A DNA stretch of 64,000 nucleotides, from positions 62,001-126,000 of IMG/VR virus record IMGVR_UViG_3300044638_006750; one strand, 5' to 3'. Both the position numbers and the translations under genes were made by a program. The notes under the pieces are model-generated. The model had not been told where the DNA came from. It saw nothing but the letters and a program-made list of their open reading frames with translations, and did not search any database. How positions within the stretch are numbered: the stretch's first letter is position 1; each line of letters opens with the position of its first letter. Below, in pieces: positions 716 to 14,874 of the stretch.

Positions 716-1045
716 ATGAAACATAATAAAAAAGATGAAGATTTAGATGATCTAATTTATAGTATCACTAAAAAATTTCAGACAACCATGATTGGAGCAT
801 TAGCTAAGTTTGAAGAATCTTTTGGATACTTATGGGATAACGATACCGAAAATGGTAAAGCATACTATAAGTTATGGCAACAAACACGAAACAATATACT
901 TAATAATGGAAATAATCAATTGAGATCGGCACTAGACGAATTGGAAGACTATGCCTATAATAAAGAAAAGGGCTATAAGTACCATTATAAATTCTATTTC
1001 AATAACAACAGACCAGAGGATAAAGGAGACCAATATGACAGGTAG
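716..1045 (+). CDS. Hypothetical protein (109 aa)
   Basis: ATG lies 2 nt after the previous stop. Helical, charged sequence. Overlaps the next gene by 11 nt. Confidence 0.8.
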   Translation: MKHNKKDEDLDDLIYSITKKFQTTMIGALAKFEESFGYLWDNDTENGKAYYKLWQQTRNNILNNGNNQLRSALDELEDYAYNKEKGYKYHYKFYFNNNRPEDKGDQYDR

Positions 1046-2019: not shown

Positions 2020-5000
2020 ATGGCTGGATTTAATTTAACCGCTCAGTTAAATATAGTTGGACCCAATAATCTTAAACCAGTCATATCTAATCTGCGTAAA
2101 CAGCTGAGTAGTGCTGGTGGTAGCATTACTCTAAATATTAATCCTAATATATCTACTTCTGTTAATAATTTAAATAAGTCATTACAGTCTTTGGATAGTA
2201 CATTAAAAAGCATCAATGCTTCTGCCTCTTCTGTCGCAGCATCTTTGAGACAAATAGGATCAGCAGCAGGTACGGTTAATATAAAATCTGTCCCTAAGGA
2301 TATCGCAGCAGTAACACAACAATCTCAAAAGCTACAACAGCAACAGTCACAAACAGCTGTCGCAACAAAAGCATCAACAGATTCTATGGTAGAATTTGGA
2401 AAGCAGTCTGCTTTAGCTATTCGCAGATTTGCTGCTTTTACATTAGTTACTGGGATTATTTATAAGGTTACAAGCGCGTTTGGAAATGCTTCCGCAGAAT
2501 TTATTAAATTCAATCAACAGATGGTACAACTATCTCAGGTTACTGGATCATCCCTACAAAATTTGGCTGGGCTAGAAAGAACCATTACGTCTTTATCAAC
2601 CAGTCTAGGTGTTTCTTCTAGTTCTTTGATAGATGTATCGAGTACCCTAGCGCAAGCAGGCTTATCTGCGCAAGAAACCGAAGAAGCATTATCTGCTCTT
2701 GCCAAGACCACCCTAGCTCCTTCGTTCGGGAATTTAAACAATACCGTAGAAGGTAGTATTGCTCTTATGCGACAGTTTGCGATTTCTACAGGACAACTCG
2801 AATCTGCACTAGGTTCGATAAACACAGTAGCTGCTAAATTTGCAGTAGAAGCAGATGATATTATTACGGCAATTCAGCGTACCGGTGGTGTGTTCGCCGC
2901 GTCTAGTAAAGGAGTAGCAGAAGGCACTGAGGCTCTGAATCAATTTATAGCAATTTTTACTAGTGTTAGAGCAACTACTCGTGAAAGCGCCGAAACGATT
3001 GCTACTGGCTTGAGAACAATTTTTACCAGAATACAAAGAAGAGATACAATAGAGCTATTAAAACAGTATGGTATACAATTAACAGATTTAGAAGGTAAAT
3101 TTGTTGGTCCTTATGAAGCTGTAAAAAGATTGAGTCAGGGTTTGGCTGGTTTAGATACAAGAGATGTCAGATTTTCCTCTATCATAGAAGAGCTTGGTGG
3201 GTTTCGTCAAGTAGGTAAAGTTATTCCATTATTACAACAATTTACTGTTGCTGAAAGAGCCCTAATGGTTGCTCAGAGAGGACAAGGGTCTCTGACCTCC
3301 GATGCTGCAAAAGCACAGCAAGCTTTAGCTATACAGATGGCAAAGGTACAAGAAGAATTTGTTGCGATGGTTCGTAAAATTGGTAGTTCTAATGAATTTC
3401 AGACAATGGTAAAGATGGCTTTAAATTTAGCTAGTGCCTTTATTCAGGTGGCTGATTCAGCTAAATATGCTTTACCAGCAATTACCGCTTTATTAGCTGT
3501 TAAGGGTACTATTGGAGCATTTAGGTTTGCCTCTGGTTTTGCAAGTGGCATGAGAAGAGGTGGAGGTGCTGCTGGATTAGGAGAAAGATTAAGCGGTGCT
3601 CCAAGAGGTTATGCTCAAGGTGGACAAATACCAGTTGCATTAGAACCAGGAGAGATGGTTTTCGTTGGAGAGTCTGCTCGTAGAGCAGGATATGGTAATC
3701 TAAGAAGATTGAACAGAGCCGGTGATCGTCCTAATCCAAGAGTAGCTTTAAATCGTGCCTCCGGAGGAGGCATATTTATGGTTCCTGGTTCTGGAAGAGG
3801 AGACACATTTAAGACTAATCTACCAGAAGGTTCTTTTGTTATAAAAAGAAAATCGGTTAGAGCAGTTGGTGCAGATAATATTGCTCAGATGGCTGCTACC
3901 GGTGGACAAATTAGACAAAATTTTGCCAGAGGAAGTTCCGGAGGACTATCGGCTGCTCCTAGGTTAGCTAGTGCCGGCAAAACTGTGAGAGCACATGTAT
4001 CTACTCCTACATCTATGACCGAAGAGATGAGGCAACAAATTCTAGACTATTATACTAAATCTGGTAAAAAAATTCCTAAAAAATTCCAACCGTCATTACT
4101 TGGTTCGTCATCAGCAGAACTTATAGAAAATCTTACAATAGGGTTACCCTATAGATATAATGAAGCCCTTAAGAGAGGATCTAATTCTGTTATTCCTCTA
4201 AGAGATTTCATCAAAAGTTTCGACAGGCCAGACTTTTTGAGGTCGTTAGGCACAAGTGGCAGGCAAAAAAAACAGTCACTACCACAATTATCGAAAACCG
4301 ATGAAGCAGAATTAATTAGATTACTCAAAAAAGAAACGATAAGAAACTCCACAAGACTCACCAAAGATATTCCAGGTCTTGCAAAAGGCTCTAGGATTAT
4401 ATCCAGTGATACTCAATTACAAAGTTTATCTGGTATAATTAAAGAATTCTATAAGAAAAAACAGACAGCACTAGTAAGACCAGTCGAAATGATGAGCTTC
4501 TATAGTCATCAGGGCAGAACACAACACAGAGACTTTTTACCAACATCATTATCTGAGGTTTTATCTCAAGGATTGTCTAAAAGATATATGGGTGGCTTAA
4601 TTCAGAGGTTAAGCGGAGGTTCAGACAAACCTCTTCAGGGTATGGGGAGGTCACAATTATTGACTGAGGCTAGAAGACTAGGAGTGAATTATGGAAATAT
4701 TGTCTCTTGGTCAGAGTTAGGGAAAAAAGGAGACATAGGAGCACAAGCTCGTTCTAGACTTATTGCAAAACTAGAAGAAGCTAGAATGCTTAGAAAAACT
4801 TCTCAAGCAGCAACATCTGCAAGAGCAAAAAGAACCAATGTTGCAGTTATAGGCGCTATGGCACCTCCCGGAGTTAGAGGTAGTAGCAGTGAAGTTATTA
4901 TTCCTGGTGCGAGAGATAGAAAAACAGGAAAAAGAACACAAGACACTCCAGCTACTCTTCATATAGGTGCTTTAGAGGGTAAAACAGCAGCTAGAGTTAC

Positions 5001-8000
5001 TGCTGTTATTAGAAATCAGACAGCCAGAATAACTCAAAAGGTTATGAAAATTATAGCTCAAGAAGCAAAAATGATTTTGCCAAACGATAATATGGCAAAG
5101 CTTAAAAGAAAACCTATGCATTCTGGTATTGCAGGAGGTTTATTAGAACAAGCTATTTTAGGTTTGATGGGTATAGACAAACCTATGGGCTCTATAGATT
5201 TAGGAGCATCTGGTCTCTCGCCAGAACTAGCCAATGTTTTTGGTATACCGTCTGCATCGGGCGTGCCAACAGATATTACATATGGAGGAGAAAAGGGGAG
5301 AACACTAGAAGAAGCAGCTAAGAGAAAAGCAGTAGGTAAGAGTAGAAACGCCAAAGGACAGAGAACATCTAGTCAGATAGGTAGGGGTTTAGCTGCTATT
5401 AGGGCTTCAAAAGCCATCGGAGGGATTGTACAAAGATTGGCAAATGGAGGAATCACCAGATCTGGTAAATTATCTAGGTCAACTTTCAAACTAATTCCTA
5501 ATGAGAAAGGTATTGGGCCAAGCCCGTTTGCATCAGGGCCAGTAGCCCAACCATTAGACTATAATGCATTAGAGAGATCTGGATTATCAATGGGCTTATC
5601 TCGTCCAATGATAACAAAAGCTATACAAGATGCTAAAATGCTTGGTATTAGTCCAGAAGAAAATATTAGAAAAATAGCATCTGAGGCCCAGTCTAAAAGA
5701 AGACCTGGTTTTACACACAGTACTGATTCTAGATCTATTTTATCTATGCTAAGAAAATCTGGTGGTCCAGTTAATTATGAAGGACCAGCCATGTTTTTTG
5801 CCAAGGGAGGCTCTGTAAAACCTGCTGTTCGCAATGTAGGTTGGATTGACAGTGATTTTCTGAGAAATAGTCCAAAAGCTAAGGCCGAGATGGATAAGCT
5901 CGGTATGAATGTAGATGAATATAAAAGATTTTTAACAGAAGAATCAATTAAAGCTAGAAAATCTGGATCAGTATCGAGATTAACAACGGTGGTCGGTTCT
6001 CCCGGTAGTGGCAAAAGTTCTTTTGCTGAGGGTAATCAAAGAACATCGGTAGCCGATAATGCTAGACTTAGAAAGACACATAGGTTTCCTATAGAAACAC
6101 CAGAAGATGTAGCCAAAGCGAACTCGATAATAGACACAGCGGCCTCTGTTTCTCCAGATAGATTGGTCGATTTGAATCAGTCAGACAGGATCGTTGCATT
6201 ATCTAGTAGCACAAAAGAAGAACAGAAAATATTAAGAAGGCAGTTAAGACATAGAACAGCTACAGGAGATAAACAATACGGTAGAACTCATACTATTACA
6301 GCTCAAGATAGTGGTGAAACTGAAGCGATGCTTCAAATGGGCTTAAGAGACAAAAAGAAATTAGTTACTCTGGGCCTTTTACCCAATTTCAAGAAAAGAA
6401 TTAAAAGACAGAACGAACTACCACTAGTACGAGAAGAACAGGTTAGTCTTGGATTTGGTAGTTTTTCTCCACCCACCAAAGCAGGCCATGATCAGGGCTT
6501 GATGTCCAATGCACAATATAAAAAGCTTGTTCTTGTTGGTCCGAATGAACCTGTTGGGGCCGACCCTCATTCCGCTCGTACAGCACTATTACCACAAGAT
6601 GTTAGACATAGATTGGCTACGAAGGCGTTTCCAGATGCATATGTGAGCAAGAAAACCTCAGGATTTGCTATACCACATGTTTTTGATGTTGGTACTGATC
6701 CAGAAACTGGCAGAAGACTATTTATTCGTAGAGCAAAGGGTAGTGAGGCTTTAGTAGCTGGAAAAGATGAGAAGTCACTCAAAAAATATGAAGAAGCTGG
6801 CTTTGGGGTTAGAGAAGTACCCAGAGACCCAAATGGAGAAAGCGGTACCGCAGCTAGAGAAAGAATATTACGAGGAGATTTTACTGGTTTCCATCCAGAA
6901 GTAGAAAAAGATTTAAGATCTAAAGCCACACAACTCTCTAATAGACAAGAAATATTGCCAAGAATTATTGAGAAAACACAAGAGAGAACTACTAAACAAG
7001 TATCCGAGATTGATAAATCTCTAAGTTCATATCCTTCAAGAATAACAGAGAAGATCAGACAAGAACAACCGGATATGGTTGCGGCTGTAGAATCTTTAAG
7101 AGCTAAAAAAACATCTATTAAAAGTAAAGCTGGTTCTAGACCTCATACAGTTTTAGCTAGACTAGCTAGAAGATATCCAGAAAGATATGGATTGGCACAA
7201 GGAGGTATGCCCCCGAAACCCCAAAAACAATTTGGTAAAATAGGACTAAGATCATCTGGTAAAGAAATAACAGCTTTTTATTTTAAAAATAATGTCAGAG
7301 AAGGATTTGTCACAGCTCATGAGATAGAAAAAGGTATTTGGAATATAGGATTGAGCAAAGCTACTAAAGGTTATGGTCCGAGACTTTACGATGCGGTTAT
7401 GGAAGCTGTAACAGCCAGAGGAGGGGTGTTAACCGCTCATAGAGGGAAGGTGAGTGGTCACGCTAAGAAAGTTTGGGATGTATATGCAAATGAAAGATCC
7501 AAGCCAGATAATAAATATGGTTCTCAGGTATCAAAAATTTCACTAGATTCCAAACACCATACATTAAGTCAAGACCCAAATGATTCTCTTAATTATGGAT
7601 ATCAACAACAGCCAAATATTATCAAGGGTCCAGATATTGTTGATATGAATGACCAAAAATATGATCGTTTTTTACAACAAATGCAGTTTGAGTTTTTAAG
7701 AGCTAATGGAGGAGGTGTCCAACGATCAGTTAGGGGTAATGTAAGACCAATTAAAAAACACTCAATGATTAAACCACAATTACAAAACAATGAACTATCT
7801 ACACTACAATCTCAAATTAATGATCTAGAGTCTAGAAGACAAGCTTTAGCTACTCATACAAAAACTGGATTTTTTGGAGGTAAAAGCAATCCATATCAAA
7901 GAGAAATATATGATTTAGAAGATGAAATAGCAAGATTATCACAAAGACGCTATCTATTATCTCAGAAGAGTGCTCCAACACCCACAGTACTAGCACAGCC

Positions 8001-11000
8001 CAGCGTGATCGCTAGATCCAAACCACAAGCAGTTGTTCCTGTAGCTAGGCCAAAAACAATAATGCCTCAACAGAGACAAAACGTTACTGCCTCATCTCGT
8101 CCTGGTTCAGTCACTATTATGCTGACAAAACAACAAAAATTGGAAATGCGTCAGACCATAGATAGACTTAATAAACAGATAGAACAAGCTAATAACACTA
8201 TAGCCACTTTGAAAAGTCATGATCGAAAACCAGGATTTATTGGTAAATTAACTGGTCAATCGACTAGAAATCCTTATCAAAATGAAATATGGGAAGCAGA
8301 AGCTGAGCAAAGTAGAGCACAAAATGAAAAACGTAAACTACTAGAATTGTATGGAGATCAACTAAATACATATACTGGATTTGCTGCTGGTGGTCATGTT
8401 ATGGCCATGTTGACTCCTGGAGAGGCAGTAATTCCTCCTCCTGAAACTAATCGTATTGGATTATCTACTTTAAGGCGTATGAATTTTGCCGATAAAAATG
8501 GAATGGGTAGAAGCAAATATGCCAAGGGTGGCAATATTGGTATAGTGCCGGGTTCTGGAGACTCAGATTCTTATGGGCCAGTAGCTCTTCCGGTTGGGTC
8601 TTTTGTTATTAGAAAAAGAGCAACAGCAGCCTTGGGGTTGGCCAAGTATTCCAGCGGCGGAGATGTTAAGAAATTTGCTACTGGAGGGTCAACCACAGTA
8701 TCTACATCTCAAACAAATTCTCGTATGCTTGACGTTAGGTCAGCAGGTGGTGTTGATCTTGGTAGCGTATTTGGTACTTCATCTATTGGTAAATTATTAG
8801 ATATAATTAAACCACAACTAGATAGTTTTGGAAATATGATAGATCGTACAACCAAAAGTTTTGGAAATTTGAAACCCGATGTTGTTCAGCAGTTATTTTA
8901 TGAGTATGCCAATGAACTAAAGAGTGGAGTATCTTCAGCAGAAGCACTACGTAATGCAGAAAATAAACTTGCTTCAAATCTTGCAGATTCGGTAGTTTCT
9001 AAAAAGGGTGTTAATGTAAGCAATTCTGGAGTAGAGCTTACATCTCCTATAAATACAAAAAATAAAGATAGTGTTAATGTTCGTAGTGCTGGTGGTATTG
9101 CTATTGGTAACATATCTACTACTAAGGGCCCAGCTGTATTAGATAGTGCTATACAACAACTTAAGCCTCATTTAGATAAGTTCGGATGGATGATAGATAA
9201 GACTACAGCAGAATTTGGAACACTCGATACCAAGGTCGTAAATCAAGCTTATCAGAAATATATTACAGCTATTCGTAACGGAACATCACAATTAGAGGCG
9301 TTGGAAGAAGCTACTCGCACAGTTAAGAGTAGTTCAACTATGGAACAAATGAGAAGAGATGATATCAAGACATCTCGGAGAAAATCACAGTCTGTATTAG
9401 GATCTATAATGGATCCTGTAGGAGCCTTGAATAGATATGGAAGATCTAGGGTATCTCTTGGTCAAGAAAAATTAGATAATCTTACTTTTAGTAAGCAGTC
9501 TCAACAAGTTTTATCTAGTGGGAAAGGTAATTTGGTAGGAGCAGCTACCAATCAAGTATTAAATAATTTAACTAAAGGACTTGGTAATGCATCATTAGCT
9601 GTTTCTGGTTTTATATCTGCTATTGGCAGAGGGGGTGGAGTAGGTAGTGCCATATCATTAATGAAGGCTGGATTTGCCCGCATGGCTGGGAACACTACAG
9701 GACTAGCCGCTAAATTTATTGGATTACAAAGAACTATTGTGGCTACAGAAGGTAAATTAAAGGGTATGACCAAAGGTCAAGCTCAACAAGCTCTTAAAGA
9801 AGGGAAAATTACTAAAGCCGAATATAAAGAGGCTTTTGGACTTAGAGGTAAAAGTAGAGCTGTATACCACAGTGCCAAAGATCAACCACCAGCGTATAAT
9901 GCTAAATTTGAACAAGAAACAAAAACGGCGCGAGCAAAAGCTAAAAAACAAGCTTTACAAGACGCTGGTTTTGGAAGACAAGCGGACACATATATCAAAG
10001 ACGGAAAAACCTATGTAAAAAGAGATGCATCCGGTAAGGCAGTAAATACACAAGTAGGAGCTAAGACACAAGCTATTATGGAAGCTAGGGATATGGCCAC
10101 GGTTAACCCTGCGTCATACGGACCCCAAAGCTCCAATGCTATTTTAGCCACTAGAAGAGCAGGGGCTACTGCTCAAGACCAGATGAGAGCAATAGTTCAT
10201 GGAGGTGGTGGCGGACCTCCTCCAAAAGGGCCAAGAGGAGCTAAAACAGCTGGAGCCGTTAAAGCACCAACCAATGTACCAGATCAACCAGGACAAAGAG
10301 GTGGTGGTGGCGGTGGTATGGGCGCATATATGGCCGAAATGGGATTATCCATGGCTGGTAGCGCTATCGCAGATCAATATGCTAAATCATTAGGAGGAGA
10401 AAAGACTTTAGCCGGTAGACAAGCGGCTAATTATGGCGGTAGTATTGTTGCTGGTGCTAGTACAGGCATGATGATGGGAAGTATGATTGGTTCAGTTGTC
10501 CCTGGTCTTGGCACCGTAGTTGGAGGAGCTATTGGAGCAGGAGTTGGAGGTCTAGCTGGTGCAGGATACGCCGCTCTTAATAGTAAAGAAGTAGCAGCAC
10601 AGTTTAGTAGTGAGCAAAGACAGGATAAAATAGGTAGACACACCACTAAACTTAATGAACAATTAACGACAATGAATAATAGAGATGTGTCTGTAGAAAC
10701 CCGCAATAGAGCCAGGGCAGAATCCAGACAAACTCTAATAAAAATGAATGAACTTTCATCTGAAGAACAAAAATCAGGAATGGAAAATGTTGGATATTTA
10801 TCTTATCAAGCAAGATCCACAGCTTCAGAAAGAGCTAATTCTGCTCAAGGAGTAGCGGACGCAAATTTATCTTCTATAGAAACGGAGATGCAGACTACTG
10901 GCAAAACGCTGGCTCAGGTTAGACAGTCTATGGATCCTGCACAGTGGGCTGCTATGACAAATACCATAGCTGATTCTGATCAAGCATATCAAGAACAAAA

Positions 11001-14000
11001 AGAAAAATTAAGAGGGAATAGTGCCGAACTAGAAAAAGAAAAACAAAAAGCCGTTGAGCGTCAAATGGCTTTCTTAAAGGTAAAAGAAGAAGCTATTCAA
11101 GCAGCCAGAGAAAATGCTAGACTAAATAAAGCGATGCAGAAAGTTACTGTATCGTTTGAAAAAATGGCAGATGCTATGAGCAATGCCGCAGCTAGAGCAA
11201 ATCAAGTTATGAAGAATGGACAGATAGGAATAGAATCCATAGACAATCCATTAGCTGCCAATCAAGTTGGTCAAATTTCTAAATCTGCCGATATAATCTC
11301 CAACCCTGAAGCATATTCGATTAAAGAAGTTGAGGACGCTGCTCGTCAATATGCTGGTGTAGCAGGTTCTAGCTCTGAACAAATGGTTCAAGCTGCTGTA
11401 TTACCTCGCAAATTAGAACAAAGTTTTGGCTCCGCTATGGTTGAAGCAAGAAGTTCTGGCAAGAATGATGAAGAGACCAGAAGCTCTGTTAAGTCCGCTG
11501 TTATGAATACTGTGAAAGCTGCATTTGGAGAAAATATAGGCAATGACATGCAAAAGAAGATAGATGACTTCCTAAACAGCAAGGCGGCATCTGGAGAATT
11601 ACAAAATATAGATTTTAACGATCTGTTAAAAGAAATTCCTGGTCTTGCAGACAAGATGGCCTCCTCTAGCAAAGTTATGAAAGCACTACAAGATCAGGCT
11701 CAATCTGCTGCCAATGCTATTGCAATGATGGGTGATGCTGCCCAGAAAACAGCATCTAAAGGCCAAGATATCAGAAATGCTAGAGCAGATACTTTTTCAA
11801 CTATTGCTAATAGTACCTTGGCATTTAGAAGAGGTACTGGAGAGAAAATTTCTTGGCAGGCTGATGCTGGAGTAAGAACACAAGCTCGTGCAATAAGATT
11901 AGGTACTACAGCTGATGTTGCAGCCAGTCCACAAAAAATGTTAGGAAGATACCTTGCTCTTCAACAGGGTGCCGACGCAGCCTCTAAGAGACAACAACAA
12001 GTGAATGAAGAACAAAAGGGGGCAATGCTTGCTGGAGGAGATCAAACTCAGGGTGCTATAGATAAGATGCAACAGGCTGCCAATACCACAGCAGAATTTG
12101 CACAAGCTACAAAACAAGCTCGTGAAGAAATTTTAGGATTGCCGAATGATATTAAAGATAACATTAATGGTATCTTAAGTGAATTACAAGACGTAATGCA
12201 AGAAAGAAGCGCTAAAATCGGAGCAGCTAGTGGATTCATGGAGAAGATGTTAACATCTACTCCTAAAGACCTTAGAAAGATGGGCAACACATTCAATAAT
12301 CTTAATCAAACTCTATCTGGGAAAGGTGTTAGTTTCGAAGAGTCATATTCTGCCAAAACTGCGTATGATCAAGTCAGGAATCAGGGCGGGACTCATATGC
12401 AAGCCCAAAGAGCCGCCCAAGAAGCATACGCTCAGGAAAGCAGTGATACGATTAGTATGGCTAAAGAATTAGCTCCTCTCCTAGGAGCCGTTGATCCAGA
12501 CGCACAAAATAAGATGATGGCTAGTGTTTATGAAAATATGTTTGCTGCTAGAGGCATGGATCCTTCGCAAATGAAGGTTGGCGATAAGAGCATGAAAGAC
12601 TACTTGGATATGATGAAGAAAGGAGCTAAAGAAGATCCAAAAGTTAAAGCTTTGAACGATGCTTTAGCAGCACAACAAGCAGCTCTTGTACAAGCTAATG
12701 CTGCTATTGAAGCAATTTATACTAAAGATCAGGCAGACATACAACAAAAAACAGGAGAAGTTATTCTAAATGCTATGCAACAAGGCGCAGAAGCTGTAAA
12801 AAAAGCTATGGAAGAAGCTAAAGTTGCTGGTATAAGCCCTCCGGGAGAAGCAGGAGCAGCTAACTCTCCACAAGCTCAGGCTCAAGCCCTTAATGAAGAA
12901 CAAACTCAACAAAGAAAGGATCAGAACCTCAATGATATAGAAGCAGCCAAAAAAGTTATTAATGATCCGGCAGCTTCTAAGGAAGACAAAGAAAAAGCTG
13001 AGAAAGTTATTGCAGAAAAAGAGCAAGAGAATGCGGTCCTTACAGGTGGACTAAGCGGCACAAGAGGACTATCGTCTGCTGAAAATATGACATTTAAAGA
13101 ACATGCTCTTCCGGGAGAAACTCCTGAAGATTTTACGAAGAGAAGGCGCAAATTGATGGATATGACAGGTCAATCTACTCCACAACAAGTGTCACAAAAT
13201 CCAACAACTCCACAACAAAACGCTGCTGGAAATGCGGCAGCAACACCTTCACCAACTACCACATCATCTACCCCATCATCCACATCTCCTGCTGGTTCAA
13301 CTTCTCCAGCCGGTCAGGCAGCAGCATCTCAAGCTGCTACTCCACAACCACCAGTAAGAGCAATTACTAGTCAGCAAAGAGAAGACGAGATTGTTCTACA
13401 ACAAGGAGAGATGGCACAAAACGAGAAAATTATTAACGATCTATCTTCTAGCGAAGAAGACAAAGAAAATGCTAGACTTGAGATACAAGGATCACAACAT
13501 AAAATAGCGATGTTACAAGGAAAAAGCAAGGAAGAAATAGCAGAAAGTGTTTATGGAACTAAATATGAAGACATGTCTCCTGAACAGAAAGAATACTTAG
13601 ATCTACAACATTCAGCTTACTCAAATAACTATAGTAGACAATATGGTAGTTTAGCTCCGCAGACCCCAGCTCCAACTTCTCAAGCCGCAAGTAATCAGGC
13701 TGCGGCACCAGCACCCAATACCGGCACTGGTCCATCTTCTCCTCCGTCGTTTGGTCAAACCATGCAAGCTGCTATGACAGCAGGACAGAATAATAATGTT
13801 GCTTATAGATCTCAAGATGGTTTATCAGGTGCTACTCGTAGTGTGATTGCAAATCTGCCTCCGCAAGTGCAAGGTATGGTTACTCAAGCCGCACAAAGCA
13901 ATCCAGCTTTAGCAACAGCAATACAAAATGGAGACCTAGCAGCTGCACAAGCAGCATTACCACCAGAAGCAATGGCTCAGATACAACAAGTAATGGCAGG

Positions 14001-14874
14001 GGCTGGTAATGCGGCATTAGCATCCGGTTCTATGCAAGCATTAAATACTGAAAGACAAGTTTCTGCCGCTCAAGGAGCAATGGCTACTGGTTCTGTTATG
14101 ACCAAACCCTCTACTAGTACTGGTCAAAAGACACCACAATGGCAGCCCTCAAGTGGTCCAATGGGATTAAATAATGTACATCAAGAGGCGTATCTCAGAG
14201 GTATGACCACGCAAGAAGTAAATTATGAAAGACAACAACAATATTTGAGTAGCTTGAATCCCGAGACTAGAGATATAGAAAAAAGGAAACTTGGTAAAAG
14301 ATTATTAAAACCAAGCGAACGACAAGAAGCTGCCATACAAGCACAGAAAGATAGTGCAGCTGCCGCGGCGGCACAACAGCCAGGGGTAGTTCCAGCCCCT
14401 GTAGGAAGTGCTCCACAAATGCCACAAACTGTACCCGGTCAAAATACCAATGGTCAGATGGTGCCTCCAACCGCACCTGCTACTCAAGCCGGATATGTTA
14501 CTCCTCCATCAGAAGCTGGTTCTCCGGTTCCGGCTCCAAGACCAGCACAAAACGTACCCGGACAACAAAATCAAGGCGCTGGTGTATTACCCGGTATGGG
14601 CGGATTCGAAGCCTTTGCCAGCAAATTGGATACATTATTGACCAAATTAGGAGAGGTAAATATTCCTACGGAAATTAGACTTACAAGCGAAAGTATAGGA
14701 GTCAATGTCACATTAAATGGTGCGGAAGTTATGAATAAGATGCCAGAACAAATTAGAGGTCAAATAGTACAAGAAGTTGTAGCAAAACTTCGAGAATACG
14801 ACAAGGGAACATCTGGAGAAGGTGCAGCACTAAGTCCAAAAATTGGTGGACAATCTACGAATACAGACGTATAA
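2020..14874 (+). CDS. Giant tape measure protein (4284 aa) with internal enzyme-like cargo domains
   Basis: SD AGAGGA at about 2005. The N-terminal region (about 2500-3360) has TP901/PhageMin_Tail-type motifs (LAQAGLSA..., INTVAAKFAVEADDI, AETIATGLRTIFTRIQR, LGGFRQVGK). Lambda gpH-like YAQGG...PGE.V / FAAGG motifs, long Ala/Gln/Lys-rich helical regions and a glycine-zipper hydrophobic segment are present. Confidence 0.92.
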   Translation: MAGFNLTAQLNIVGPNNLKPVISNLRKQLSSAGGSITLNINPNISTSVNNLNKSLQSLDSTLKSINASASSVAASLRQIGSAAGTVNIKSVPKDIAAVTQQSQKLQQQQSQTAVATKASTDSMVEFGKQSALAIRRFAAFTLVTGIIYKVTSAFGNASAEFIKFNQQMVQLSQVTGSSLQNLAGLERTITSLSTSLGVSSSSLIDVSSTLAQAGLSAQETEEALSALAKTTLAPSFGNLNNTVEGSIALMRQFAISTGQLESALGSINTVAAKFAVEADDIITAIQRTGGVFAASSKGVAEGTEALNQFIAIFTSVRATTRESAETIATGLRTIFTRIQRRDTIELLKQYGIQLTDLEGKFVGPYEAVKRLSQGLAGLDTRDVRFSSIIEELGGFRQVGKVIPLLQQFTVAERALMVAQRGQGSLTSDAAKAQQALAIQMAKVQEEFVAMVRKIGSSNEFQTMVKMALNLASAFIQVADSAKYALPAITALLAVKGTIGAFRFASGFASGMRRGGGAAGLGERLSGAPRGYAQGGQIPVALEPGEMVFVGESARRAGYGNLRRLNRAGDRPNPRVALNRASGGGIFMVPGSGRGDTFKTNLPEGSFVIKRKSVRAVGADNIAQMAATGGQIRQNFARGSSGGLSAAPRLASAGKTVRAHVSTPTSMTEEMRQQILDYYTKSGKKIPKKFQPSLLGSSSAELIENLTIGLPYRYNEALKRGSNSVIPLRDFIKSFDRPDFLRSLGTSGRQKKQSLPQLSKTDEAELIRLLKKETIRNSTRLTKDIPGLAKGSRIISSDTQLQSLSGIIKEFYKKKQTALVRPVEMMSFYSHQGRTQHRDFLPTSLSEVLSQGLSKRYMGGLIQRLSGGSDKPLQGMGRSQLLTEARRLGVNYGNIVSWSELGKKGDIGAQARSRLIAKLEEARMLRKTSQAATSARAKRTNVAVIGAMAPPGVRGSSSEVIIPGARDRKTGKRTQDTPATLHIGALEGKTAARVTAVIRNQTARITQKVMKIIAQEAKMILPNDNMAKLKRKPMHSGIAGGLLEQAILGLMGIDKPMGSIDLGASGLSPELANVFGIPSASGVPTDITYGGEKGRTLEEAAKRKAVGKSRNAKGQRTSSQIGRGLAAIRASKAIGGIVQRLANGGITRSGKLSRSTFKLIPNEKGIGPSPFASGPVAQPLDYNALERSGLSMGLSRPMITKAIQDAKMLGISPEENIRKIASEAQSKRRPGFTHSTDSRSILSMLRKSGGPVNYEGPAMFFAKGGSVKPAVRNVGWIDSDFLRNSPKAKAEMDKLGMNVDEYKRFLTEESIKARKSGSVSRLTTVVGSPGSGKSSFAEGNQRTSVADNARLRKTHRFPIETPEDVAKANSIIDTAASVSPDRLVDLNQSDRIVALSSSTKEEQKILRRQLRHRTATGDKQYGRTHTITAQDSGETEAMLQMGLRDKKKLVTLGLLPNFKKRIKRQNELPLVREEQVSLGFGSFSPPTKAGHDQGLMSNAQYKKLVLVGPNEPVGADPHSARTALLPQDVRHRLATKAFPDAYVSKKTSGFAIPHVFDVGTDPETGRRLFIRRAKGSEALVAGKDEKSLKKYEEAGFGVREVPRDPNGESGTAARERILRGDFTGFHPEVEKDLRSKATQLSNRQEILPRIIEKTQERTTKQVSEIDKSLSSYPSRITEKIRQEQPDMVAAVESLRAKKTSIKSKAGSRPHTVLARLARRYPERYGLAQGGMPPKPQKQFGKIGLRSSGKEITAFYFKNNVREGFVTAHEIEKGIWNIGLSKATKGYGPRLYDAVMEAVTARGGVLTAHRGKVSGHAKKVWDVYANERSKPDNKYGSQVSKISLDSKHHTLSQDPNDSLNYGYQQQPNIIKGPDIVDMNDQKYDRFLQQMQFEFLRANGGGVQRSVRGNVRPIKKHSMIKPQLQNNELSTLQSQINDLESRRQALATHTKTGFFGGKSNPYQREIYDLEDEIARLSQRRYLLSQKSAPTPTVLAQPSVIARSKPQAVVPVARPKTIMPQQRQNVTASSRPGSVTIMLTKQQKLEMRQTIDRLNKQIEQANNTIATLKSHDRKPGFIGKLTGQSTRNPYQNEIWEAEAEQSRAQNEKRKLLELYGDQLNTYTGFAAGGHVMAMLTPGEAVIPPPETNRIGLSTLRRMNFADKNGMGRSKYAKGGNIGIVPGSGDSDSYGPVALPVGSFVIRKRATAALGLAKYSSGGDVKKFATGGSTTVSTSQTNSRMLDVRSAGGVDLGSVFGTSSIGKLLDIIKPQLDSFGNMIDRTTKSFGNLKPDVVQQLFYEYANELKSGVSSAEALRNAENKLASNLADSVVSKKGVNVSNSGVELTSPINTKNKDSVNVRSAGGIAIGNISTTKGPAVLDSAIQQLKPHLDKFGWMIDKTTAEFGTLDTKVVNQAYQKYITAIRNGTSQLEALEEATRTVKSSSTMEQMRRDDIKTSRRKSQSVLGSIMDPVGALNRYGRSRVSLGQEKLDNLTFSKQSQQVLSSGKGNLVGAATNQVLNNLTKGLGNASLAVSGFISAIGRGGGVGSAISLMKAGFARMAGNTTGLAAKFIGLQRTIVATEGKLKGMTKGQAQQALKEGKITKAEYKEAFGLRGKSRAVYHSAKDQPPAYNAKFEQETKTARAKAKKQALQDAGFGRQADTYIKDGKTYVKRDASGKAVNTQVGAKTQAIMEARDMATVNPASYGPQSSNAILATRRAGATAQDQMRAIVHGGGGGPPPKGPRGAKTAGAVKAPTNVPDQPGQRGGGGGGMGAYMAEMGLSMAGSAIADQYAKSLGGEKTLAGRQAANYGGSIVAGASTGMMMGSMIGSVVPGLGTVVGGAIGAGVGGLAGAGYAALNSKEVAAQFSSEQRQDKIGRHTTKLNEQLTTMNNRDVSVETRNRARAESRQTLIKMNELSSEEQKSGMENVGYLSYQARSTASERANSAQGVADANLSSIETEMQTTGKTLAQVRQSMDPAQWAAMTNTIADSDQAYQEQKEKLRGNSAELEKEKQKAVERQMAFLKVKEEAIQAARENARLNKAMQKVTVSFEKMADAMSNAAARANQVMKNGQIGIESIDNPLAANQVGQISKSADIISNPEAYSIKEVEDAARQYAGVAGSSSEQMVQAAVLPRKLEQSFGSAMVEARSSGKNDEETRSSVKSAVMNTVKAAFGENIGNDMQKKIDDFLNSKAASGELQNIDFNDLLKEIPGLADKMASSSKVMKALQDQAQSAANAIAMMGDAAQKTASKGQDIRNARADTFSTIANSTLAFRRGTGEKISWQADAGVRTQARAIRLGTTADVAASPQKMLGRYLALQQGADAASKRQQQVNEEQKGAMLAGGDQTQGAIDKMQQAANTTAEFAQATKQAREEILGLPNDIKDNINGILSELQDVMQERSAKIGAASGFMEKMLTSTPKDLRKMGNTFNNLNQTLSGKGVSFEESYSAKTAYDQVRNQGGTHMQAQRAAQEAYAQESSDTISMAKELAPLLGAVDPDAQNKMMASVYENMFAARGMDPSQMKVGDKSMKDYLDMMKKGAKEDPKVKALNDALAAQQAALVQANAAIEAIYTKDQADIQQKTGEVILNAMQQGAEAVKKAMEEAKVAGISPPGEAGAANSPQAQAQALNEEQTQQRKDQNLNDIEAAKKVINDPAASKEDKEKAEKVIAEKEQENAVLTGGLSGTRGLSSAENMTFKEHALPGETPEDFTKRRRKLMDMTGQSTPQQVSQNPTTPQQNAAGNAAATPSPTTTSSTPSSTSPAGSTSPAGQAAASQAATPQPPVRAITSQQREDEIVLQQGEMAQNEKIINDLSSSEEDKENARLEIQGSQHKIAMLQGKSKEEIAESVYGTKYEDMSPEQKEYLDLQHSAYSNNYSRQYGSLAPQTPAPTSQAASNQAAAPAPNTGTGPSSPPSFGQTMQAAMTAGQNNNVAYRSQDGLSGATRSVIANLPPQVQGMVTQAAQSNPALATAIQNGDLAAAQAALPPEAMAQIQQVMAGAGNAALASGSMQALNTERQVSAAQGAMATGSVMTKPSTSTGQKTPQWQPSSGPMGLNNVHQEAYLRGMTTQEVNYERQQQYLSSLNPETRDIEKRKLGKRLLKPSERQEAAIQAQKDSAAAAAAQQPGVVPAPVGSAPQMPQTVPGQNTNGQMVPPTAPATQAGYVTPPSEAGSPVPAPRPAQNVPGQQNQGAGVLPGMGGFEAFASKLDTLLTKLGEVNIPTEIRLTSESIGVNVTLNGAEVMNKMPEQIRGQIVQEVVAKLREYDKGTSGEGAALSPKIGGQSTNTDV
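5812..6400 (+). other. P-loop NTPase/kinase-like domain within the TMP
   Basis: Walker A in TTVVGSPGSGKSSF (GSPGSGKS at 5995-6018), a Walker B-like IIDT, and a LID-like RRQLRHR, as in the NMP-kinase/AAA_33 fold. Confidence 0.7.
6440..6920 (+). other. HIGH-superfamily nucleotidyltransferase (cytidylyltransferase/NMNAT-like) domain within the TMP
   Basis: GFGSFSPPTKAGH (6451-6489) matches the G-x-F-x-P-P/T-x-x-G-H signature. LVAGKD matches the VxGxD strand. ESGTAARERILRGDF (6838-6882) matches the S-[AG]-[ST]-x-x-R...GD motif. Confidence 0.72.
7210..7700 (+). other. GNAT-like acetyltransferase domain within the TMP
   Basis: Motif A-like ATKGYGPRLYDAVME (about 7360-7404), then GVLTAHRGKVSGHAKKVWDVY (motif B-like). 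Confidence 0.62.

What the first reader, a model, noticed from the sequence alone, without database searches (positions are those of the whole stretch)
7210..7700. GNAT-like acetyltransferase cassette inside the TMP
Seen: IWNIGLSKATKGYGPRLYDAVMEAVTARGGVLTAHRGKVSGHAKKVWDVY, bounded by GLAQGG and RANGGG. Established: the GxG motif A followed by a helix binds acetyl-CoA in GNATs. Inference: an injected acetyltransferase that could modify host proteins, tRNA or defence factors.
Basis: partly seen in the sequence, partly recalled or inferred. Interest (0 to 1): 0.65.

Follow-up and report, generated by a model that had tools for sequence, protein, structure and literature searches.

The report
GNAT-fold enzyme module in giant tape-measure protein
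A 160-residue stretch of a 4,284-residue phage tail tape-measure protein folds like a GCN5-type acetyltransferase. It belongs to a large, undescribed viral family and is one of several swappable enzyme modules that the phage probably delivers into its host with its DNA.

Summary
The quoted peptide is aa 1773-1822 (nt 7336-7485) of one open frame, window 2020-14874. This frame is a 4,284-aa tape-measure protein (TMP) of a complete 232.7-kb uncultured phage.

The stretch between GLAQGG and RANGGG has no Pfam, PHROG, NCBIfam or PDB sequence match. Its AlphaFold model is confident (pLDDT 84). Every one of the top 50 matches in two structure searches is a GNAT-fold protein (Z 5.6-7.6). The closest are minimal GNATs (At1g77540, YjdJ, AcrVA5) and GCN5.

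One family member, P0164, passes Pfam's own GNAT threshold over the same region, so the link also holds at sequence level.

The family is large: 1,814 cluster representatives. Some are free-standing proteins and some sit inside giant proteins. None were found in cultured phages with the three queries tried.

Only 17 of the 121 closest TMPs carry the module. Near relatives lose homology just after the GG linker, so it is a true cassette.

Acetyl-CoA binding, catalysis, target and injection remain inferred. The window's copy replaces two near-invariant aspartates of the family with His and Gln. I rate it a new variant of a known kind (polyvalent injected proteins, TMP-fused enzymes), with moderate interest.

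The parts
2020..14874 (+). Giant tape-measure protein gene (4,284 aa, P0001) that hosts the module
   Evidence: Single open frame. PF10145 at aa 188-393, 81 bits. PHROG TMP families phrog_28, 4211, 14917 and 167 on aa 1-640. At least 1,261 giant relatives of the N-terminal 520 aa.
2020..3579 (+). Conserved N-terminal TMP domain (aa 1-520), ending in a hydrophobic segment at aa 483-501
   Evidence: 79% identical to P0002.
5800..7191 (+). Neighbouring module (aa 1261-1724): P-loop kinase plus HIGH-type nucleotidyltransferase, with 'PTKAGH' and 'ISGTxxR' motifs
   Evidence: AF2 pLDDT 86.6. VIA Z 12.2 to PPAT 4nah, 12.0 to NMNAT 1f9a, also NadR and NadM; the P-loop half matches zeta toxin at Z 8.2. 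Weak sequence hits to NMNAT and PPAT. In the 27 proteins that carry both modules it lies N-terminal to the GNAT-like module.
7189..7206 (+). N-terminal linker GLAQGG (aa 1724-1729)
   Evidence: Equivalent [FY]AxGG-type motifs sit at this edge in homologues. Relatives lacking the module lose homology at aa ~1734-1742.
7225..7704 (+). GNAT-fold domain proper (aa 1736-1895). Elements in order: four beta strands, alpha, beta, alpha, two beta strands, then a family-specific beta strand and a long alpha helix
   Evidence: AF2 pLDDT 83.8, pTM 0.79. Foldseek and VIA matches are all GNAT fold. ESM Atlas TM 0.69 to viral clusters.
7360..7377 (+). Motif A equivalent, A-T-K-G-Y-G (aa 1781-1786), at the end of strand 4 and the start of helix 62-75
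   Evidence: G1784 and G1786 each occur in 101 of 102 family members. This is the only region hhalign pairs with a canonical GNAT profile. It reads QGKGYG in the bridging member P0164.
7438..7443 (+). H1807-R1808 just after strand 5. The family consensus here is D-R (D in 93/102, R in 92/102)
   Evidence: His is kept in P0001-P0005. A role as catalytic or ligand-contact residues is inference only.
7453..7485 (+). Motif B-like helix S-x2-A-x2-V-W-x2-Y (aa 1812-1822)
   Evidence: A1815 and W1819 occur in 102/102 members, S1812 in 97/102, Y1822 in 98/102. Helix 89-101 in the model.
7699..7716 (+). C-terminal linker RANGGG (aa 1894-1899)
8380..8724 (+). Repeated 'GG..PGSG..D....LP.GSFVI' element (aa 2121-2235). 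A second copy lies at aa 521-640 (nt 3580-3939)
   Evidence: Internal and cross-protein matches. In most homologues this element follows the GNAT-like module directly.
10444..10563 (+). Gly-rich hydrophobic, membrane-type segment (aa 2809-2848)
   Evidence: Kyte-Doolittle scan.

Best explanation
Window 7225-7704 encodes a divergent, minimal member of the GNAT (GCN5-related N-acyltransferase) superfamily. It keeps the beta-sheet core, the glycine-rich strand-loop-helix (motif A) and the following beta-alpha unit (motif B-like). It lacks the alpha1-alpha2 arm and has its own C-terminal extension. It is one of several independently folding enzyme modules strung between GG-rich linkers in the variable middle of a giant tape-measure protein. 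Another such module is a kinase plus PPAT/NMNAT-like nucleotidyltransferase pair directly upstream. Shown: the fold, superfamily kinship, strong purifying selection, and sporadic cassette-like presence among closely related TMPs. Inferred: the TMP leaves the tail at infection, so the pre-made module reaches the host envelope or cytoplasm before any phage gene is expressed. There it would use host acetyl- or acyl-CoA to acylate a host molecule. A protein target is most plausible, as with the small phage GNAT AcrVA5 or phiKMV Rac. H1807 (Asp in the family) and Y1822 are candidate catalytic residues.
For: Fold: the AF2 model is confident. The Foldseek PDB top hits are nearly all GNATs at probability 0.9-1.0. 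In the VIA-align search of 48,161 chains the top 50 are all GNAT fold, Z 5.6-7.4. The second look gave Z up to 7.6 with 236 chains at Z>=5. Sequence bridge: P0164 matches the family profile at E 2.5e-14 over residues 38-190. It also passes PF00583 at 25.2 bits, above the 20.7 cut-off, over residues 46-129. It aligns to the window's domain at E 2e-7. hhalign pairs only motif A with a canonical GNAT profile. Protein-language-model neighbours are viral N-acetyltransferase clusters, score 0.94. Selection: the module is 87% identical between P0001 and P0002, against 19-60% in the coiled-coil and linker parts. About 25 near-invariant positions are concentrated on motifs A and B. Cassette: 17 of the 121 closest TMPs carry it, and homology breaks just after the GG linker. 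Precedents: TMP-fused virion RNA polymerase of P23-45 (bioRxiv 10.1101/2022.12.01.518664); GNAT domains in injected polyvalent proteins (PMC5512222); TMP-related modular effectors (PMC13277306).
Against: No GNAT sequence model detects the window's copy. Pfam found nothing, and the best hit across homologues was E 0.16 to Acetyltransf_16. The PF00583 six-frame scan of the genome finds only another gene. hhalign probability is below 1%. Z 7-8 is the range the tool calls middling. The Q/R of motif A is Ala. The alpha1-alpha2 arm, which shapes the acceptor site in canonical GNATs, is absent. The window's copy has His and Gln at two positions where the family has Asp in 93/102 and 99/102 members. 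CoA binding, activity, target and translocation were not and could not be tested. Three copies of a folded ~18-kDa domain at the same level may not fit a tail-tube lumen (my own reasoning, not tested).
Confidence: 0.6

Rival explanations
1. Non-catalytic GNAT-fold module. The domain keeps the fold, and perhaps CoA or nucleotide binding, but serves as a structural spacer, plug or binding module in the TMP rather than as an enzyme.
For: The window's copy has lost two near-invariant Asp of the family. There is no alpha1-alpha2 acceptor arm. Some relatives carry 2-4 tandem copies; in other GNAT proteins tandem copies often include dead ones (my knowledge). A fold match alone shows no function (notes).
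Against: The glycine loop and the motif B helix are almost invariant across 102 diverse members, including free-standing 115-260-aa proteins that have no TMP to space. The substituting His is conserved within the subclade. The module is 87% identical between P0001 and P0002, more than the TMP core.
Confidence: 0.2
2. Small-molecule acyltransferase working with the adjacent kinase and PPAT/NMNAT-like nucleotidyltransferase. Together they would act on a cofactor or signalling nucleotide (CoA-, NAD- or immune-messenger-related) rather than on a host protein.
For: The kinase-NT pair abuts the module in P0001 and P0002. It lies N-terminal to it in the 27 proteins that carry both. The NT half matches PPAT, a CoA-pathway enzyme, at Z 12.2, and NMNAT. 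Structure searches also find this GNAT-like fold in viral proteins annotated as carrying cytidylyltransferase-like or NTP_transf_2 domains.
Against: The two modules are often separated by up to ~1,200 aa. They occur independently: 26 of the 121 closest TMPs have the kinase-NT pair only and 6 have the GNAT-like module only. Most free-standing family members have no such partner.
Confidence: 0.15
3. Chance resemblance. The segment is not related to GNATs, and the fold match reflects a common alpha/beta arrangement.
For: Best Z is 7.6, best Foldseek E-value 1.4e-3, hhalign probability below 1%.
Against: All of the top 50 matches in two searches are GNAT fold. P0164 passes Pfam's GNAT threshold over the homologous region. 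The only hhalign-paired segment is motif A. The PLM neighbours are an independent line of evidence.
Confidence: 0.05

Closest known systems
Minimal GNATs (Pfam Acetyltransf_CG / COG2388: Arabidopsis At1g77540, E. coli YjdJ) and anti-CRISPR AcrVA5
   Same: Small GNAT core aligned over 79-86 residues: 1xmt Z 7.2 at rmsd 2.6, 5i0c Z 7.0, 2il4 (CoA complex) Z 6.7, 6iuf AcrVA5 Z 6.4. AcrVA5 is a mobile-element acetyltransferase that inactivates a defence protein (my knowledge).
   Different: No sequence-model match: the six-frame PF14542 scan finds only another gene. The domain has a ~55-residue C-terminal extension with its own conserved motifs. It is embedded in a 4,284-aa virion protein instead of being free.
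GNAT domains of phage and plasmid polyvalent proteins (Iyer et al. 2017, PMC5512222)
   Same: Acyltransferase-fold module among many enzyme modules in one giant polypeptide thought to enter the host with the DNA. Solo versions exist as well, and modules were accreted repeatedly.
   Different: Those two families are RimI-like and detectable as GNATs. They were described in capsid- or T4SS-delivered proteins, and the paper does not mention tape-measure proteins. The family here is outside Pfam, PHROGs and NCBIfam.
TMP-fused enzymes: P23-45 gp96 virion RNA polymerase (bioRxiv 10.1101/2022.12.01.518664), peptidoglycan-hydrolase motifs in TMPs, and Sle1-type TMP-related CIS effectors (PMC13277306)
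   Same: A giant TMP carrying folded catalytic domains that act at or after ejection, with a modular, exchangeable functional domain.
   Different: A different enzyme class. No experimental evidence exists here. The module sits mid-protein between GG linkers, not at a terminus.
Canonical GNATs (PF00583; GCN5/PCAF, RimI, AAC(6'))
   Same: The beta4-loop-alpha3 with GxG, then beta5-alpha4, then beta6-beta7. Human GCN5 5trm gives Z 7.6 over 112 residues.
   Different: Alpha1-alpha2 are absent and Q/R is replaced by Ala. The motif B Asn and Tyr positions are Ser and Trp (spacing compared from memory). The phage has a separate canonical GNAT elsewhere, at 58 bits.

Membership tests
GNAT superfamily (acyl-CoA N-acyltransferase fold) | Mixed beta-sheet core with the order beta-beta-beta-beta4-alpha3-beta5-alpha4-beta6-beta7 | tested here: met
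   Secondary-structure order in the AF2 model. All top-50 structural neighbours are GNAT fold, aligned over model residues 12-140.
GNAT superfamily (acyl-CoA N-acyltransferase fold) | Motif A: Q/R-x-x-G-x-G/A in the beta4-alpha3 loop (pyrophosphate-binding) | tested here: inconclusive
   G-x-G is present and occurs in 101/102 family members, in the right structural position. The Q/R position is Ala (81/102). Bridging member P0164 has the full QGKGYG.
GNAT superfamily (acyl-CoA N-acyltransferase fold) | N-terminal alpha1-alpha2 arm | tested here: not met
   There are no helices before residue 62 of the model. The arm is also absent from the accepted minimal GNATs 1xmt and 5i0c, so its absence does not exclude superfamily membership.
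GNAT superfamily (acyl-CoA N-acyltransferase fold) | Beta4/beta5 V-shaped splay holding the pantetheine arm, and actual CoA binding | not testable with these tools
Binding needs a biochemical assay.
Pfam Acetyltransf_1 (PF00583) and related sequence families | Score above the curated gathering threshold | tested here: not met
   There is no hit for the window's domain or in the six-frame genome scan. One family member, P0164, does pass at 25.2 bits against a 20.7 cut-off. So the family sits at the edge of the model, and the window's copy lies outside it.
Pfam Acetyltransf_CG (PF14542, minimal GNAT) | Score above the curated threshold | tested here: not met
   The six-frame scan of the genome hits only the separate canonical GNAT, at 19 bits.
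Phage tail tape-measure protein (host protein) | PF10145 / TP901-type N-terminal domain, very long helical or low-complexity regions, Gly-rich hydrophobic segment | tested here: met
Polyvalent proteins (Iyer et al. 2017) | Many unrelated catalytic domains in one polypeptide of a mobile element, with variable architecture between relatives | tested here: met
   Kinase, HIGH-nucleotidyltransferase and GNAT-fold modules are present. Architecture varies among relatives.
Polyvalent proteins (Iyer et al. 2017) | Processing peptidase (MPTase) that releases the domains, and delivery with the DNA | not tested
   No peptidase domain appeared in the Pfam scan of the whole protein. Delivery needs experiments.

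The most novel reading that the evidence does not exclude
The variable middle third of these giant tape-measure proteins is a pre-loaded effector array. It would be delivered before any phage transcription. In this array the GNAT-fold module inactivates a host defence or core protein by acylation (AcrVA5- or Rac-like). The adjacent kinase plus NMNAT/PPAT-like pair would restore a cofactor (NAD+ or CoA) that defence systems deplete. This would be the first tape-measure-borne anti-defence enzymes, carried by a previously undescribed GNAT clade of more than 1,800 sequence clusters.
Probability: 0.25. Interest if true: 0.8.

Novelty: new variant of a known kind. Interest (0 to 1): 0.5.

Why it matters
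If the module is active and delivered, it extends the 'polyvalent injected protein' idea to the tape-measure protein of a very large clade of uncultured large phages, with at least 1,261 giant TMP relatives. It would also give a function to a sizeable viral protein family that current domain libraries miss. Enzymes that act before the first phage gene is expressed are natural candidates for countering immediate host defences. The swap of modules between near-identical TMP backbones would then be a readable record of that arms race. In practice the domain is small, well modelled and bounded by clear linkers, so it is easy to express and assay.

Tried and rejected
These direct sequence identifications of the window's domain gave nothing:
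- Pfam
- PHROGs
- NCBIfam (only a 13-bit noise hit)
- PDB by phmmer and by two profiles
- tblastn against 50,697 GenBank phage records, using the window's domain and two consensus-like relatives

Profile-profile comparison with a canonical GNAT alignment built from the phage's own GNA1-like gene gave probability below 1%. I therefore do not claim sequence-level significance from hhalign. The sequence link rests on the bridging member P0164.

A scan of fusion partners in ten mid-sized family members found only one DUF192 fusion and no functional hint. The genomic context of two free-standing members was uninformative. A Pfam scan of the segments that replace the module in close relatives found nothing. 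PHROG and Pfam scans of neighbouring window ORFs were almost blank.

I considered and set aside three GNAT-fold alternatives: Fem/L-F-transferase-type (aminoacyl-tRNA-dependent), Mom-type and LuxI-type enzymes. They did not stand out among the structural neighbours; one CoA-dependent AHL synthase appears at rank 47. They are not excluded.

Complex prediction was not used because I make no protein-protein binding claim. The reads tools were not used.

Full report
**Observation**

The window is positions 62,001-126,000 of a 232,683-bp IMG/VR virus record that CheckV rates complete. All large ORFs lie on the + strand. ORF 2020..14874 is one uninterrupted 4,284-aa frame, P0001. Its first 520 residues match PF10145 PhageMin_Tail (81 bits) and several PHROG tape-measure families. 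GLAQGG is at aa 1724 and RANGGG at aa 1894.

**What the segment is**

The 176 residues between the two GG motifs match nothing by sequence. Pfam, PHROGs, NCBIfam, PDB sequences and GenBank phages all gave no hit.

A word search restricted to this region found the same domain at 38-87% identity in 27 other giant proteins of 2.6-6.2 kaa, most carrying PF10145.

With that alignment, AlphaFold2 gave a confident model (pLDDT 83.8, pTM 0.79). In domain numbering (1 = aa 1725) the elements in order are:
- strands 17-22, 25-30, 38-46 and 49-57
- helix 62-75
- strand 79-81
- helix 89-101
- strands 113-117, 135-139 and 149-151
- helix 155-171

The structure searches agree on the fold:
- Foldseek against the PDB returned almost only GNAT acetyltransferases at probability 0.9-1.0. 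E-values were modest, best 1.4e-3.
- VIA-align against 48,161 representative chains gave 50 of 50 top rows with the GNAT fold, Z 5.6-7.4. These included 3lod, the minimal GNATs 1xmt and 5i0c, Elp3, AcrVA5 and TacT3.
- The second look at Foldseek's list gave Z up to 7.6 (human GCN5) and 236 chains at Z>=5.

These Z values are in the range the tool calls middling. I therefore weight the unanimity of the hits and the independent evidence below, not the score itself.

**Independent lines for GNAT kinship**

2. When the family profiles (A1, A4) are compared with a canonical GNAT profile (A3), the only paired segment is this motif: 'SKATKGYGPRLYD..' against 'HP..R..GYGK.IVD..'. The probability is below 1%, so this is consistent but not significant. 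A3 was built from the phage's own PF00583 gene.
3. A bridging sequence exists. P0164 (192 aa) matches the family profile at E 2.5e-14 over residues 38-190. It aligns to the window's domain at E 2e-7. It also passes Pfam Acetyltransf_1 above the curated threshold (25.2 against 20.7 bits) over residues 46-129. Its motif reads QGKGYG.
4. The protein-language-model search puts the domain next to viral 'N-acetyltransferase' clusters in which 13-48% of members carry PF00583, score 0.94.
5. Five homologues give faint hits to Acetyltransf_16.

Together these make superfamily membership very likely. The window's copy itself is nonetheless outside every curated GNAT sequence model.

**Anatomy and conservation**

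In 102 diverse family members the near-invariant positions cluster in four places:
- S55, A57, G60, an aromatic at 61, G62, P63, L65, Y66, D67 and E71 (motif A and its helix)
- G77 and L80, then D83-R84 just after strand 5
- V87, S88, A91, V94, W95, Y98 and R102 (the next helix); A91 and W95 are present in 102/102
- D112, V113 and Y137 in the family-specific C-terminal part

The spacing S-x2-A-x2-V-W recalls the N-x2-A-x2-L-Y of GNAT motif B. That comparison is from memory and is a lead, not a test.

The domain differs from canonical GNATs in three ways:
- It has no alpha1-alpha2 arm, like the minimal GNATs.
- It has Ala where Q/R stands in motif A.
- It has a ~55-residue extension.

The window's copy and its closest relatives (P0001-P0005) have His at position 83 and Gln, Ser or Gln-like residues at position 112. 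The family has Asp there in 93/102 and 99/102 members. His could still serve as a general base, but this remains a real caveat for activity.

**Size and range of the family**

The exhaustive HMMER search was used after the family scans and the word search left function open. It found 1,814 representatives at E<=1e-3, 495 at <=1e-10 and 64 at <=1e-30. Of the 165 listed proteins, 86 are longer than 1,000 aa (up to 7,122 aa) and 69 are free-standing proteins of <=500 aa. Sixteen have 2-4 tandem copies.

ESM Atlas structural neighbours are viral hypothetical-protein clusters of 160-204 aa, with TM 0.65-0.69 and rmsd about 2 A. Forty-eight members scanned against Pfam and PHROGs gave essentially nothing apart from P0164. 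No cultured-phage record matched.

**Cassette behaviour**

The N-terminal TMP domain has at least 1,261 giant relatives at 55-80% identity. Among the 121 closest, 17 carry the GNAT-like module, 37 carry the kinase-nucleotidyltransferase module and 11 carry both.

P0208-P0210 are 78-79% identical to P0001 in the N-terminal domain but lack the module. Their homology to P0001 stops at aa ~1734-1742, just after LAQGG, and resumes at aa ~2400-2438.

Between P0001 and P0002, module identities are as follows:
- GNAT-like module: 87%
- kinase: 88%
- nucleotidyltransferase: 87%
- N-terminal TMP domain: 79%
- coiled-coil, linker and repeat parts: 19-60%

[AS]xGG motifs are strongly enriched, 18 against 3.9 expected. 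They bracket the domain in homologues too. So the segment is a selected, independently folding, exchangeable module, and 'cassette' is a fair word for it.

**Surroundings**

Directly upstream (aa 1261-1724) is a conserved 470-residue unit with a Walker A motif and 'PTKAGH' and 'ISGTxxR' motifs. Its model (pLDDT 86.6) matches phosphopantetheine adenylyltransferase (Z 12.2), NMN adenylyltransferases (Z 12.0), and NadR and NadM. The P-loop half resembles zeta-toxin-type kinases at Z 8.2.

A Gly-rich hydrophobic segment lies downstream at aa 2809-2848. No Phage_sheath_1 match was found in the genome, so the tail may be non-contractile.

**Mechanism**

Shown: fold, kinship, selection and modularity.

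Inferred from established knowledge:
- TMPs leave the tail at infection and can carry active enzymes into or across the envelope. Examples are the P23-45 gp96 virion RNA polymerase (bioRxiv 10.1101/2022.12.01.518664), TMP-related modular effectors (PMC13277306) and polyvalent proteins with GNAT domains (PMC5512222; also summarised in PMC7824862, which cites the phiKMV Rac GNAT).
- I therefore think the most likely role is a pre-made acyl-CoA-dependent transferase that modifies a host molecule in the first moments of infection.

The rivals are:
- a non-catalytic GNAT-fold module
- a small-molecule acyltransferase coupled to the neighbouring kinase and adenylyltransferase
- chance resemblance

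None of these can be separated further without biochemistry.

**Novelty and verdict**

GNAT domains in injected polyvalent proteins and enzymes fused to TMPs are both known. New here are the combination (a GNAT-fold module inside a TMP) and a large GNAT clade invisible to current domain libraries. I rate it a new variant of a known kind. Interest is 0.5. Confidence is about 0.9 for the fold and cassette claims and about 0.5 for an active, delivered acyltransferase, giving 0.6 overall.

Noticed in passing
window 5800-7191 (P0001 aa 1261-1724): A P-loop kinase plus HIGH-type nucleotidyltransferase module sits directly upstream. Its closest structural matches are PPAT, NMNAT, NadR and NadM (Z 12). 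It is present in 37 of the 121 closest TMPs. It could be a delivered NAD+- or CoA-pathway enzyme pair.
   Followed up: partly
window 2020-9200 (P0001 aa 1-2400): [AS]xGG motifs occur 18 times against 3.9 expected and sit at module edges. They may be flexible linkers or processing sites. No protease was identified.
   Followed up: partly
window 3580-3939 and 8380-8724: There are two copies of a ~100-residue element with the motif GG-x-[IV]-x-VPGSG-xx-D-...-LP-x-GSFVI. In most homologues this element directly follows the GNAT-like module. Its function is unknown.
   Followed up: no
window 7438-7440 and 7525-7527 (H1807, Q1836): The window's copy has His and Gln where the wider family has near-invariant Asp (93/102 and 99/102). 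The His is conserved within the P0001-P0005 subclade.
   Followed up: partly
window 8725-9429 (P0001 aa 2236-2470): An internal tandem repeat of ~110 residues (R1/R2, each starting near 'RSAGG') is also present in P0005.
   Followed up: no
G000:C1:41277-43067 (outside the window; L003 1456-3246, minus strand): The phage also encodes a canonical 153-aa GNAT (PF00583, 58 bits). Relatives of it are named glucosamine-phosphate N-acetyltransferase. It lies in the same minus-strand run, two genes from a GlmS-like SIS-domain gene, which suggests amino-sugar synthesis.
   Followed up: partly
proteins P0068, P0077, P0139, P0096: Family members elsewhere carry 2-4 tandem copies of the domain. One is fused to DUF192 (COG1430).
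   Followed up: partly
window 716-1045 and 951-1928: Two overlapping ORFs lie immediately upstream of the TMP, in the position where tail-assembly-chaperone frameshift pairs usually sit. Neither has a family match.
   Followed up: no
window 27883-63999: A run of very large + strand ORFs (1,763, 2,219, 906, 1,089, 1,923 and >1,774 aa) lies downstream of the TMP. The few ORFs scanned between the TMP and this run were almost without family matches. No tail-sheath family was found in the genome.
   Followed up: no
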